The translations under genes and the position numbers were made by a program. The notes beneath the pieces are model-generated. The model saw only the letters and a list, made by a program, of their open reading frames with translations, had not been told where the DNA came from and did not search any database. A stretch of 57,660 nucleotides of DNA from Octopus bimaculoides (Eukaryota), in contig NC_068998.1 in assembly GCF_001194135.2 (NCBI RefSeq), positions 254,117-311,776 on the forward strand, given 5' to 3'. Positions 50,700 to 52,250 of this stretch are shown here, piece after piece. Each line of letters starts with the position of its first letter. The first letter of the stretch is position 1.

Positions 50700-52250
50700 C
50701 CTCTCATATCTCCTCTAACTTTCTCTCTATCCCCGTCCCTCACGTGTCAATACCCCCTCCCCCACCGCGTCTATCTCTCATCGCCTCCCCCTCACTCCCA
50801 CCCACCCCCAACAACAAGCTTATCAGCCATCACTGCTGCTTTGGATGGTGGATCTAAGAAAGTGGTGGTGGTTGCGTTACTGCTTGTTCTTCTTGTTGTT
50901 GTTGCCTGCTACTCTATATGTACAAGCAGCTCTTATTGACAGTGTGAGCTTTTTTTCAAACTCCACAACTGCAATTTTTTTCCCCACCCCCCCACCTCAC
51001 TTTTGGCATCACCAATTTATTGTTTTGCTTAGTAACGCTGCTGTCTTCCACCAACACCGGCCAAATGAACTTATAATGACTGTTGGCGTTGTTTAGAGTC
51101 CGTCGATGTCGAAAGCAAACAGGACCTGCCGAACAAACAAACAAAAACAACTCTTCTTTTTTGTTTTGTTTTGTTTTATTTCTGAATATTTCAGAAGGGA
51201 GACTTTTTGTTTATTGTTGTTTTGGTTGTGGTAGGACAAAACAACATGTTGACGACTACTATGGATACGTACCTGGGAGATTTGTGGAGGATACCCGCAT
51301 GCGCTTGCGTACGCCATATGGATTATTGTATAGGGTAGGTAGGTAAACAGGTAGCTTATTGGATACCTGAACTCTCTTTTCTCTCTCTCCCCATCCGCCT
51401 GTCTGTCTGTCCATTCATTCGTTCGTTTGTTTGTTCATTCATTCCATCTGAAGGTAGAGAAAACAGTTGAACAAAAACCATCTCAACAAAGTTGTTTCTT
51501 TTCAAGTCGGCACGATTTAACAACAACAACACTAACTACAAACATGAAAGAAAAAAAAACATTCCCTCTTTTAAATTTCTTTCTTTTCTAATTTATTGCC
51601 ACTTATTTTATTTCGTTTGTTATTTTTGTTTAGTTTTTTTTTTCTCTTTCTGTTGATATAAGCTTCCTCGCCACACTCAACACATTCCTTTCCACCACCA
51701 TTAACAACAACAACAACAACACCCACATTGCTACCATGTTGTTCTTTGTTGTTTACTATTCTTTAATAAAACTTCCATATTAAAAGAAAAGGCATGAATG
51801 TCAAAACATCTTCATTACCTTATTAATGCACTTCTACAAACTTTTTAAACTTGTCTAAAAATCCCCATCACTTACCCCCACCCTTGTCAAGCCCACCCCA
51901 TCGACTTTTGGTTCTATTTAATAAAACTTAAATACTTTTAGATTTTTCTTTTCTCGATTAACGACAACATCAGTTTCAATTTTAGGCTACGTGTATGGTG
52001 TGTGTATGTGGGGGGGGGCAATCTTCTCCTTGCCCCCTTACCTCTTCCCTTCCCCACTGTCCTGCACGGATTTGAACTCAAGCTGCTCACTCCAAAACTA
52101 AATGCTCTTTTTTCTCTTTCTGTCAACATTAGTTTACTGGCTTAATTGGCACGTGGTTCCTAATTAATTGAAGCAGGAGTGGGTGGAGGGAGGGAGTTAA
52201 TTGATTCGTTACTGGTAGATATAATTAAGTGTGAAGAGATAATGTAGGGC
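50700..52250. promoter_or_regulatory. Intronic CpG-retaining promoter/enhancer-like region
   Basis: Visibly many CpGs (e.g. gtccgtcgatgtcgaa, cgcatgcgcttgcgtacgcc, gtcggcacga) in otherwise CpG-poor DNA; NRF1-like CGCATGCGC at 51296-51304; several C-rich/G-run tracts. Confidence 0.5.
51235..51342 (+). CDS. Candidate 108-nt alternative (cassette or alternative first) coding exon in the CASK reading frame
   Basis: ttttggttgtggtag| acceptor and TAG|GTAAAC donor; phase 2-2; stop-free in the frame set by the 21748 exon: (R)TKQHVDDYYGYVPGRFVEDTRMRLRTPYGLLYRVG(R). No homologue recognised, and a competing acceptor exists at 51194. Confidence 0.4.

What the first reader, a model, noticed from the sequence alone, without database searches (positions are those of the whole stretch)
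51235..51342. Frame-preserving 36-codon exon candidate that would splice into the CASK glycine-rich loop and rebuild the kinase beta-1 strand
Seen: an AG acceptor at 51234 and a TAG|GTAAAC donor at 51343 define exactly 108 nt. Joined to the phase-2 end of the 21748 exon, it reads ...LQEVIG-R-TKQHVDDYYGYVPGRFVEDTRMRLRTPYGLLYRVG-R-[GPFSVV]. It is stop-free, non-repetitive and protein-like. Its end, Y-G-L-L-Y-R-V-G-R, has the same Y-x-L-x-x-x-[VI]-G-R register as Y-D-L-Q-E-V-I-G-R of the canonical exon. Established: this is the subdomain-I entry to the Gly loop of CASK's atypical Mg2+-independent CaMK domain. Inference: either a cassette exon inserting 36 aa at the nucleotide-binding loop, or an alternative first exon (in-frame ATG at 51299, MRLRTPYGLLYRVGR) giving CASK a swappable N-terminal strand from an intronic promoter. 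I do not know such an isoform. Caveat: a stronger-looking acceptor at 51194 gives an in-frame stop if joined to the 21748 exon.
Basis: partly seen in the sequence, partly recalled or inferred. Interest (0 to 1): 0.75.

Follow-up and report, generated by a model that had tools for sequence, protein, structure and literature searches.

The report
Alternative first exon of CASK
The flagged stretch lies inside a real, roughly 540-base alternative first exon of the CASK gene that is spliced to exon 2, but it uses a donor site 8 bases upstream of the predicted one, no acceptor, and a different reading frame, so the predicted 36-residue insert is not what the RNA shows.

Summary
That pattern is commonplace, with 87 such open AG..GTRA segments in this intron.

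RNA assemblies show something else. Contigs of 3.2-3.8 kb from several runs lie unbroken on about 50795/50831 to 51334. They then continue into GGTCCATTCAGTGTGGTA..., which is GPFSVV, CASK exon 2.
- The acceptor at 51234 is not used by any assembled contig that crosses it.
- The donor is 51334|GTAGGT in 5 runs of this species and 3 runs of a sister species.
- One run points to 51338|GT.

So this is an alternative first exon from an intronic start, not a cassette. Its in-frame ORF is MLTTTMDTYLGDLWRIPACACVRHMDYCIG|GPFSVV, not ...YGLLYRVGR|GPFSVV. It follows five upstream ATGs and changes GRGPFS to GGPFS in the glycine-rich loop.

Use differs by sample. Two runs assembled only this 5' end; in another the canonical exon has about 11-fold higher depth.

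This is an ordinary kind of feature, of moderate interest for CASK. Whether and where the leader is translated is untested.

The parts
21740..21809 (+). Canonical ATG-containing CASK exon (ATG at 21748; MATDEDVPFSSIYDLQEVIG-R). It is an internal exon: the acceptor follows 21739 and the donor is 21809|GTAAGC.
   Evidence: RNA contigs in X20 (depth 131-150) and X25 (depth 6.7) lie on 21740-21810. Before them comes an upstream 5'UTR exon (...ACTGTGAACAGCTATGAGGAGGACTATCTA) that is not in the window. After them comes GGTCCATTCAGTGTGGTACGAAGATGTGTC. The best PDB hits are CASK.
50795..51334 (+). Alternative first exon of CASK, major form. The 5' end of about 50795-50831 is taken from contig ends. 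The 3' end is the donor 51334|GTAGGT.
   Evidence: Four contigs lie on it without a break: X17 (3705 nt, depth 72), X18 (3764 nt, depth 24), X19 (3719 nt, depth 24) and X20 (421 nt). Where the continuation is listed (X17 and X19) it reads GGTCCATTCAGTGTGGTACGAAGATGTGTC = GPFSVVRRCV. X30 gives the same end, as do X50, X51 and X52 of a second species.
51335..51348 (+).
   Evidence: Contig pieces end at 51335 in 8 runs and at 51339 in X45 (3168-nt contig, depth 11). None ends at 51343. Because exon 2 starts with G, a piece ending at 51335, 51339 or 51343 maps uniquely to a cut after 51334, 51338 or 51342.
51246..51334 (+). ORF in frame with CASK when donor 51334 is used: MLTTTMDTYLGDLWRIPACACVRHMDYCIG|GPFSVV. 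There are further in-frame ATGs at 51261 (A at -3, G at +4) and 51318.
   Evidence: Translation of the exon joined to the RNA-derived start of exon 2. The ORF is kept in organism E with one Thr-to-Ala change. Whether it is translated was not tested.
50845..51096 (+). Upstream ORF 1 of the leader: 83 codons, ATG in a G(-3)/G(+4) context, 14-50 nt from the inferred 5' end.
   Evidence: It has no match as a called gene in public assemblies.
51106..51234 (+). Upstream ORF 2 of the leader: 42 codons, ending 12 nt before ATG 51246. Three further short uORFs start at 50918, 51065 and 51076.
51235..51342 (+). Its first 100 nt are the 3' part of the real exon. Its last 8 nt are intron in the major form.
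50700..50830 (+). Presumed promoter region: a C-rich, CpG-enriched stretch just upstream of the contig 5' ends, with CACGTG at 50741-50746. (CA)n/(TA)n microsatellites lie upstream at about 50260-50700.
   Evidence: Sequence. CpG observed/expected is 0.55-0.85 over 50700-51700, against a window median of 0.20 (top 2-6% of 600-nt windows). Promoter function is inferred, not shown.

Best explanation
Positions of about 50795-51334 are an alternative first exon of CASK. It is transcribed from a start site inside the long intron that follows the canonical ATG exon, about 29 kb downstream of that exon. It is spliced from the donor 51334|GTAGGT directly to CASK exon 2 (G|GGT CCA TTC... = GPFSVV).

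The resulting mRNA lacks the canonical start codon and the 21 residues MATDEDVPFSSIYDLQEVIGR. Its only ORF that continues into CASK starts at ATG 51246, or at 51261 or 51318. That ORF would replace those 21 residues with up to 30 unrelated ones (MLTTTMDTYLGDLWRIPACACVRHMDYCIG). The junction then reads C-I-G-G-P-F-S instead of V-I-G-R-G-P-F-S. The canonical beta-1 strand is replaced by an unrelated sequence, and the first glycine of the GxGxxS loop is displaced by one residue.

Five upstream ATGs precede this ORF, so translation should be inefficient. The donor belongs to a triple GYNNGY-type tandem site. A 4-nt slip to 51338 puts a TAG in frame just before the junction.

Which of the two 5' ends is used differs strongly between samples.

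Shown: the transcript structure, the donor, the join to exon 2, the difference between samples, and the presence of the exon in a second species. Inferred: the promoter, the start codon used, and the effect on the kinase fold.
For:: contigs of 3705, 3764 and 3719 nt (X17, X18, X19) and 421 nt (X20) lie with 0 mismatches on 50800/50831/50916 to 51335. Those listed (X17 and X19) run on into GGTCCATTCAGTGTGGTACGAAGATGTGTC. The X18 and X19 contigs start at their own position 1 at 50831 with no upstream exon attached.

the same 30 letters follow the canonical exon at 21810. This fixes the start of exon 2 as GGGTCC... and hence the alternative donor at 51334|GT.

X30 gives the same end. Three runs of a second species (organism E: 9 mismatches and 8 gapped letters over the 241 nt) give it too.

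X17 and X18 show no contig on the canonical exon but depth 72 and 24 on the alternative one. X20 shows 131-150 on the canonical exon against 12 on the alternative.

frames, ATGs and uORFs.

the ORF is kept in organism E.

CpG observed/expected is 0.83-0.85 here against a median of 0.20.

(PMC4267661): GYNNGY is the commonest form of alternative 5' splice site, and it is often coupled to NMD.
Against: All RNA evidence comes from assembled contigs. These drop minor variants, and their depth is only a rough measure.

The three raw-read runs available had almost no reads here, so junction use could not be counted.

The 5' end is taken from contig ends, not from CAGE or 5'RACE. The low-complexity sequence upstream could have broken the assemblies.

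Five upstream ATGs, including an 83-codon uORF in a strong context, argue that ATG 51246 may be reached rarely.

No predicted protein with this N-terminus was found. The database search does not show that none exists.

Three more distant species showed no contig at least 80% alike. Conservation is therefore shown only in one close relative, and the few differences cannot tell coding constraint from none (Fisher p = 0.1-0.26).
Confidence: 0.8

Rival explanations
1. A 36-codon cassette exon (51235-51342) is spliced between the canonical ATG exon and exon 2, inserting 36 residues before the glycine-rich loop.
For: The segment is open and frame-preserving. AG and GT flank it.
Against: Eleven contigs from eleven runs cross 51234/51235 without a break. 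No loose end was reported at 51235 or at the 51194 acceptor. In X20 and X25 the contig on the canonical exon runs directly on into exon 2. Open AG..GT segments of this kind occur 87 times in the intron. The donor 51342|GTAAAC lacks the G at +5.
Confidence: 0.02
2. The donor 51342|GTAAAC is used, at least in some cells. ATG 51299 then starts MRLRTPYGLLYRVGR|GPFSVV, an N-terminus that keeps an intact GxGxxS loop and a beta-1-like end.
For: With this donor the junction keeps V-G-R-G-P-F-S, and the 31-residue join still finds CASK structures (E 0.012). The RNA-supported join does not. YGLLYRVGR scores higher against YDLQEVIGR than 99.9% of intronic 9-mers, and it lies only 8 nt from a real CASK donor. 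Contigs drop rare variants, so a minor form is not excluded.
Against: No contig ends at 51343 in any of the runs examined. By consensus it is the weakest of the three donors, with A at +5 and C at +6. ATG 51246 and ATG 51261 precede ATG 51299 and would be out of frame. G-R gives 11 of the 17 similarity points and follows from the GGTAG|GT string; the other residues are at p = 0.045. No such protein is on record.
Confidence: 0.1
3. The exon is a purely non-coding leader. Ribosomes are captured by the uORFs. CASK is then either made from a downstream ATG, as an N-terminally truncated protein with a crippled N-lobe, or hardly made at all. On this reading the alternative promoter acts mainly as a translational or NMD throttle rather than making a new N-terminus.
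For: Five upstream ATGs, including an 83-codon uORF with G at -3 and +4. The 4-nt donor slip to 51338 (X45) places TAG 51331-51333 in frame, the pattern that PMC4267661 links to NMD-coupled regulation. The peptide has no relatives anywhere.
Against: The dominant donor is one of the two of the three tandem donors that keep an ATG-initiated ORF open into CASK. That ORF, and its ATG, are kept in the second species. uORF1 starts only 14-50 nt from the inferred cap. uORF2 ends 12 nt before ATG 51246, which allows re-initiation. None of this is decisive.
Confidence: 0.3
4. The signal is an artefact: chimeric assembly, genomic DNA or unspliced pre-mRNA in the RNA libraries.
For: One low-depth contig (X46, 151 nt, depth 2.5) reads through the donor unspliced. 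Several low-complexity patches nearby attract unrelated transcripts.
Against: The same GT-bounded junction to exon 2 was assembled independently in 8 runs from at least four studies and two species, at depths up to 72. There is zero depth in the intron just downstream.
Confidence: 0.02

Closest known systems
Alternative promoters / alternative first exons of animal genes (general class)
   Same: Two mutually exclusive 5' exons are each spliced to the same second exon. They are used to different degrees in different samples, and the downstream one lies inside the first long intron.
   Different: Nothing unusual in kind. The particular point is that the swap falls one codon before the glycine-rich loop of a kinase fold, so the N-terminal strand of the domain is exchanged rather than an unstructured tail.
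Drosophila CASK-beta / CASK-alpha, from two independent transcription start sites (PMC4075472, citing Slawson et al. 2011)
   Same: CASK is already known to use two start sites that give proteins with different N-termini.
   Different: The fly's internal start lies further downstream and removes the whole CaMK and L27 region, giving an MPP1-like protein. Here the start lies upstream of exon 2, so all of the CaMK domain from GPFSVV onward is retained and only the 21 residues encoded by the canonical first coding exon are replaced.
Human CASK transcript variants (PMC8208546)
   Same: Alternative processing of CASK that tunes partner binding.
   Different: The alternative human exons analysed there (11, 19, 20, 23L) all encode linkers between domains. 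That paper describes none at the N-terminus or inside the CaMK domain.
GYNNGY tandem 5' splice sites (PMC4267661)
   Same: GTAGGT carries two GTs 4 nt apart. Both are apparently used (51334 mostly, 51338 in one run), and the slip changes the frame and creates a premature stop, as in NMD-coupled cases.
   Different: Here three GTs are in register (GTAGGTAGGTAAAC). Each would put a different frame of the leader into CASK. Use of the third was not seen.

Membership tests
Alternative first exon (alternative promoter) | Transcripts begin in the exon, with no upstream exon joined to it | tested here: met
   The X18 and X19 contigs start at their position 1 at 50831. X17 reaches about 50795. No loose end lies before them. 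This is assembly-level evidence only, not CAGE or 5'RACE.
Alternative first exon (alternative promoter) | Spliced through a canonical donor to the exon shared with the other 5' end | tested here: met
   GT at 51335-51336. The continuation is identical to the one that follows the canonical exon. The acceptor of exon 2 lies outside the window.
Alternative first exon (alternative promoter) | Mutually exclusive with the other 5' exon and used differentially | tested here: met
   X17 and X18: alternative exon at depth 72 and 24, canonical exon not assembled. X20: canonical 131-150 against alternative 12. X25: a canonical-exon contig was assembled; the alternative exon was not examined in that run. 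Contig depth is only a rough measure.
Alternative first exon (alternative promoter) | Independent promoter (start-site cluster, open chromatin) | not testable with these tools
   Only indirect evidence: local CpG observed/expected of 0.55-0.85 against a median of 0.20.
Cassette exon | Acceptor used, with an upstream exon joined at 51235 | tested here: not met
   All eleven contigs that cover 51234/51235 continue straight along the genome.
GYNNGY tandem donor | Two GY dinucleotides 4 nt apart, both used as cut sites | tested here: inconclusive
   51334 is seen in 8 runs. 51338 is inferred from one contig whose piece ends at 51339 (X45), and its continuation was not displayed. No raw junction counts are available.
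Protein kinase glycine-rich loop (GxGxxG/S) as in the CASK CaMK domain | G-x-G spacing before P-F-S kept in the new N-terminus | tested here: not met
   The RNA-supported join reads C-I-G-G-P-F-S against the canonical V-I-G-R-G-P-F-S. It finds no CASK structure. Only the unobserved 51342 join keeps G-R-G.
CaMK-less short CASK isoforms (Drosophila CASK-alpha type) | Internal start downstream of the CaMK and L27 exons | tested here: not met
   The exon splices to exon 2, which encodes the glycine-rich loop itself. The CaMK domain is therefore retained.

The most novel reading that the evidence does not exclude
The triple tandem donor may act as a frame selector on a tissue-specific 5' exon. A cut after 51334 gives CASK a 30-residue N-terminus with a shortened, probably nucleotide-binding-impaired glycine loop. 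A cut after 51338 gives a stop and so switches the mRNA off. A cut after 51342 gives the short MRLRTPYGLLYRVGR N-terminus with an intact GxGxxS loop. Splice-site choice within 8 nt would then toggle the state of CASK's atypical kinase domain.
Probability: 0.08. Interest if true: 0.55.

Novelty: new member of a known kind. Interest (0 to 1): 0.3.

Why it matters
CASK is a synaptic scaffold whose CaMK domain is an atypical kinase and a docking site. The papers I read describe N-terminal variation only in the fly, where the whole CaMK domain is removed. The human variants studied affect only linkers.

This 5' exon dominates in some samples. It replaces the N-terminal strand of the CaMK domain and shifts the first glycine of the nucleotide-binding loop. 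It would therefore be a natural experiment on whether CASK's nucleotide binding matters in vivo.

It is equally possible that the exon is only a uORF-laden leader that lowers CASK output. Either way, the practical lesson is that gene models here need both 5' ends. The predicted 36-residue insert should not be annotated.

Tried and rejected
Raw reads. The three runs kept as raw reads (X40-42) had almost no CASK reads at this exon: about 2 reads in X41 and no junctions. The three donors could therefore not be counted.

Rejected read-laying runs. The 5' end could not be followed upstream of 50800.

Protein database searches.
- A hybrid canonical query returned only short CASK fragments from other animals and no cephalopod. 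These negatives are therefore weak.
- A full HMMER scan of 1.84 billion representatives with the frame-1 peptide gave two hits. Both are translated tandem repeats and are spurious.

Retrieving transcript contigs. I tried this through small ORFs of the exon, but none is on record.

Exon duplication. This was tested by nucleotide identity anchored at each donor and was not significant.

More distant species. Organisms B, C and D have no contig at least 80% alike on the exon.

Other checks. There is no Rfam family and no tRNA in the window. The exon is not a copy of anything else in the window.

Full report
**What the sequence shows**

AG sits at 51233-51234, 108 nt follow (51235-51342), and GTAAAC starts at 51343. 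Joined to the phase-2 end of the exon that starts with ATG 21748, the segment reads ...LQEVIG-R-TKQHVDDYYGYVPGRFVEDTRMRLRTPYGLLYRVG-(R).

The upstream exon is CASK. Its 21 residues plus the RNA-derived start of exon 2 find CASK CaMK-domain structures as best hits (E 5e-8), with CaMKII next at 4e-4. Exon 2 itself is not in the window.

**Is the pattern more than chance?**

No. On the + strand of the 35.9 kb of intron in the window there are 87 AG..GTRA segments of at least 90 nt that are stop-free in the required frame and preserve it. Seventy of them are at least 108 nt. First-order random sequence gives 37 +/- 9 and 24.

The nucleotide identity of the candidate's tail to the canonical exon is 25/70 when anchored at 51342, p = 0.07.

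The peptide resemblance (YGLLYRVGR against YDLQEVIGR) is nominally rare. It scores 17 with BLOSUM62, a score reached by 15 of 19,911 intronic 9-mers and by none of 1,327 GT-followed positions. But 11 of the 17 points are the G-R, which the string GGTAG|GT produces automatically. The other seven residues are at the 4.5% level.

**What the RNA shows**

Public RNA runs of the same organism hold this region. The contigs laid on 50800-51800 are:

|---|---|---|---|---|
| X17 | 3705 | 72 | 50800-51335 | 0 |
| X18 | 3764 | 24 | 50831-51335 | 0 |
| X19 | 3719 | 24 | 50831-51335 | 0 |
| X20 | 421 | 12 | 50916-51335 | 0 |

The X17 contig reaches about 5 nt beyond the laid stretch. The X18 and X19 contigs start at their own first base. 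The listed continuations (X17, X19) leave the genome and read GGTCCATTCAGTGTGGTACGAAGATGTGTC, which translates to GPFSVVRRCV.

The very same 30 letters follow the canonical exon at 21810 in X20 and X25. Exon 2 therefore starts GGGTCC.... The alternative exon ends at 51334, with GT at 51335-51336 (ATAGG|GTAGGT).

X30 gives the same end. So do three runs of a second, closely related species (organism E: X50, X51, X52). Their contigs align over 51095-51335 with 9 mismatches and 8 gapped letters.

One run (X45, a 3168-nt contig at depth 11) has a piece ending at 51339. Given the G that starts exon 2, this means a cut after 51338. Its continuation was not displayed, so this is an inference.

No contig starts or breaks at 51235 or at the 51194 acceptor. 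Eleven contigs run straight through. One low-depth contig (X46) reads through the donor unspliced.

**What it is**

It is an alternative first exon of about 540 nt (about 50795-51334), spliced to CASK exon 2. It is not a cassette exon.

The canonical ATG exon is itself internal (21740-21809). It is preceded in the mRNA by a 5'UTR exon that is not in the window. The canonical promoter therefore lies more than 21.7 kb upstream of it, and the alternative start lies about 29 kb downstream of it.

The stretch just upstream of the contig ends is C-rich. From 50700 to 51700 the CpG observed/expected ratio is 0.55-0.85, against a window median of 0.20 (top 2-6% of windows). This fits a promoter but does not prove one.

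**Use differs by sample**

- In X17 and X18 the alternative exon heads the only assembled CASK 5' end, and nothing lies on 21740-21810.
- In X20 the canonical exon has depth 131-150 against 12 for the alternative.
- In X25 a contig of the canonical exon was assembled; the alternative exon was not examined in that run, which was not among the holders listed.

Samples are coded, so I cannot name tissues. Contig depth is only a rough measure.

**Coding consequences**

The three GTs (GTAG GTAG GTAAAC) are 4 nt apart, so each puts a different frame of the exon into CASK.

- **Donor 51334 (the observed one).** The in-frame ORF is MLTTTMDTYLGDLWRIPACACVRHMDYCIG|GPFSVV. ATGs are at 51246, at 51261 (A at -3, G at +4) and at 51318.
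- **Donor 51338.** TAG 51331-51333 closes the frame just before the junction.
- **Donor 51342 (not observed).**

In the observed mRNA the junction reads C-I-G-G-P-F-S where the canonical protein has V-I-G-R-G-P-F-S. The N-terminal strand is replaced by unrelated sequence, and the first glycine of GxGxxS is displaced by one residue. This join finds no CASK structure. The unobserved join still does (E 0.012).

Five upstream ATGs precede ATG 51246. They give uORFs of 83, 9, 3, 6 and 42 codons, and the first is in a strong context. Translation of the CASK frame would therefore need leaky scanning or re-initiation.

Organism E keeps the ATG and the open frame, with one Thr-to-Ala change. The few differences between the two species cannot separate coding constraint from none (Fisher p = 0.1-0.26).

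**Comparison with what is known**

Alternative first exons are ordinary.
- Drosophila CASK has two start sites, but the internal one removes the whole CaMK and L27 region (PMC4075472).
- In the human brain study, all the alternative CASK exons analysed (11, 19, 20, 23L) encode inter-domain linkers (PMC8208546).
- GYNNGY tandem donors are the commonest alternative 5' splice sites. They are mostly noise and are sometimes coupled to NMD (PMC4267661).

I could not check whether genome annotations of this species already list this 5' exon. The protein database searches missed even the RNA-proven form.

**Verdict**

The acceptor, donor, frame, start codon and the "rebuilt beta-1 strand" are not what the RNA shows.

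Confidence by step:
- The transcript structure is well supported, at about 0.9.
- Translation from the 51246 frame is about even odds against a non-coding, uORF-laden leader.
- A minor 51342 isoform is not excluded, at about 0.1.

The decisive test is a junction-read count over the three donors in raw reads, which I could not run.

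Noticed in passing
window 51335-51348: There is a triple in-register donor string, GTAG GTAG GTAAAC. The cut after 51334 dominates. 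One run (X45) points to 51338, which puts a TAG in frame. The third cut (51342) was not seen.
   Followed up: partly
window 49834-50005 (-) and 52901-53113 (+); also 11012-11223, 10734-10877, 15081-15255, 55893-56043: A short interspersed repeat of about 170-210 nt has at least 6 copies in the window. Two copies in opposite orientation, with arm segments 92-94% complementary (85% over the full 174 nt), flank the alternative exon about 800 nt upstream and about 1.6 kb downstream. In the canonical pre-mRNA they could pair. The downstream copy explains part of a second CpG-rich patch at 52500-53700.
   Followed up: partly
window 50260-50700: Long (TA)n and (CA)n microsatellites lie directly upstream of the alternative exon's 5' end.
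   Followed up: no
window 50741-50746: A CACGTG (E-box) sits in the C-rich stretch about 50-90 nt upstream of the contig 5' ends. This is a consensus match only.
   Followed up: no
window 50884-50904, 51140-51185, 51517-51559, 51691-51727: Low-complexity patches (GTT/CAA-type runs) are matched by many unrelated, highly expressed transcripts. They produce false depth peaks and false 'joints' such as 51177->51703.
   Followed up: yes
window 21781-22100: In X20 a 478-nt contig at depth 5 reads through the canonical donor into the intron (unspliced pre-mRNA). Spliced contigs there are at depth 131-150.
   Followed up: no
window 21740 and upstream: The canonical ATG exon is preceded in the mRNA by a 5'UTR exon ending ...ACTGTGAACAGCTATGAGGAGGACTATCTA. 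That exon is not in the window on either strand, so the canonical promoter lies more than 21.7 kb upstream.
   Followed up: yes
window 25160-25260: A (CAG)n/(TAG)n tract creates a nested series of about 30 pseudo-acceptors in one open frame. This inflates any count of exon-like segments.
   Followed up: no
window 5122-5182, 10284-10342, 19025-19180, 22337-22346, 31862-32239, 39187-39573, 39805-39814, 45309-45454, 46928-46937, 48893-48902, 49317-49441: There are eleven runs of N (assembly gaps), mostly next to microsatellites. One lies about 1.4 kb upstream of the alternative exon.
   Followed up: no
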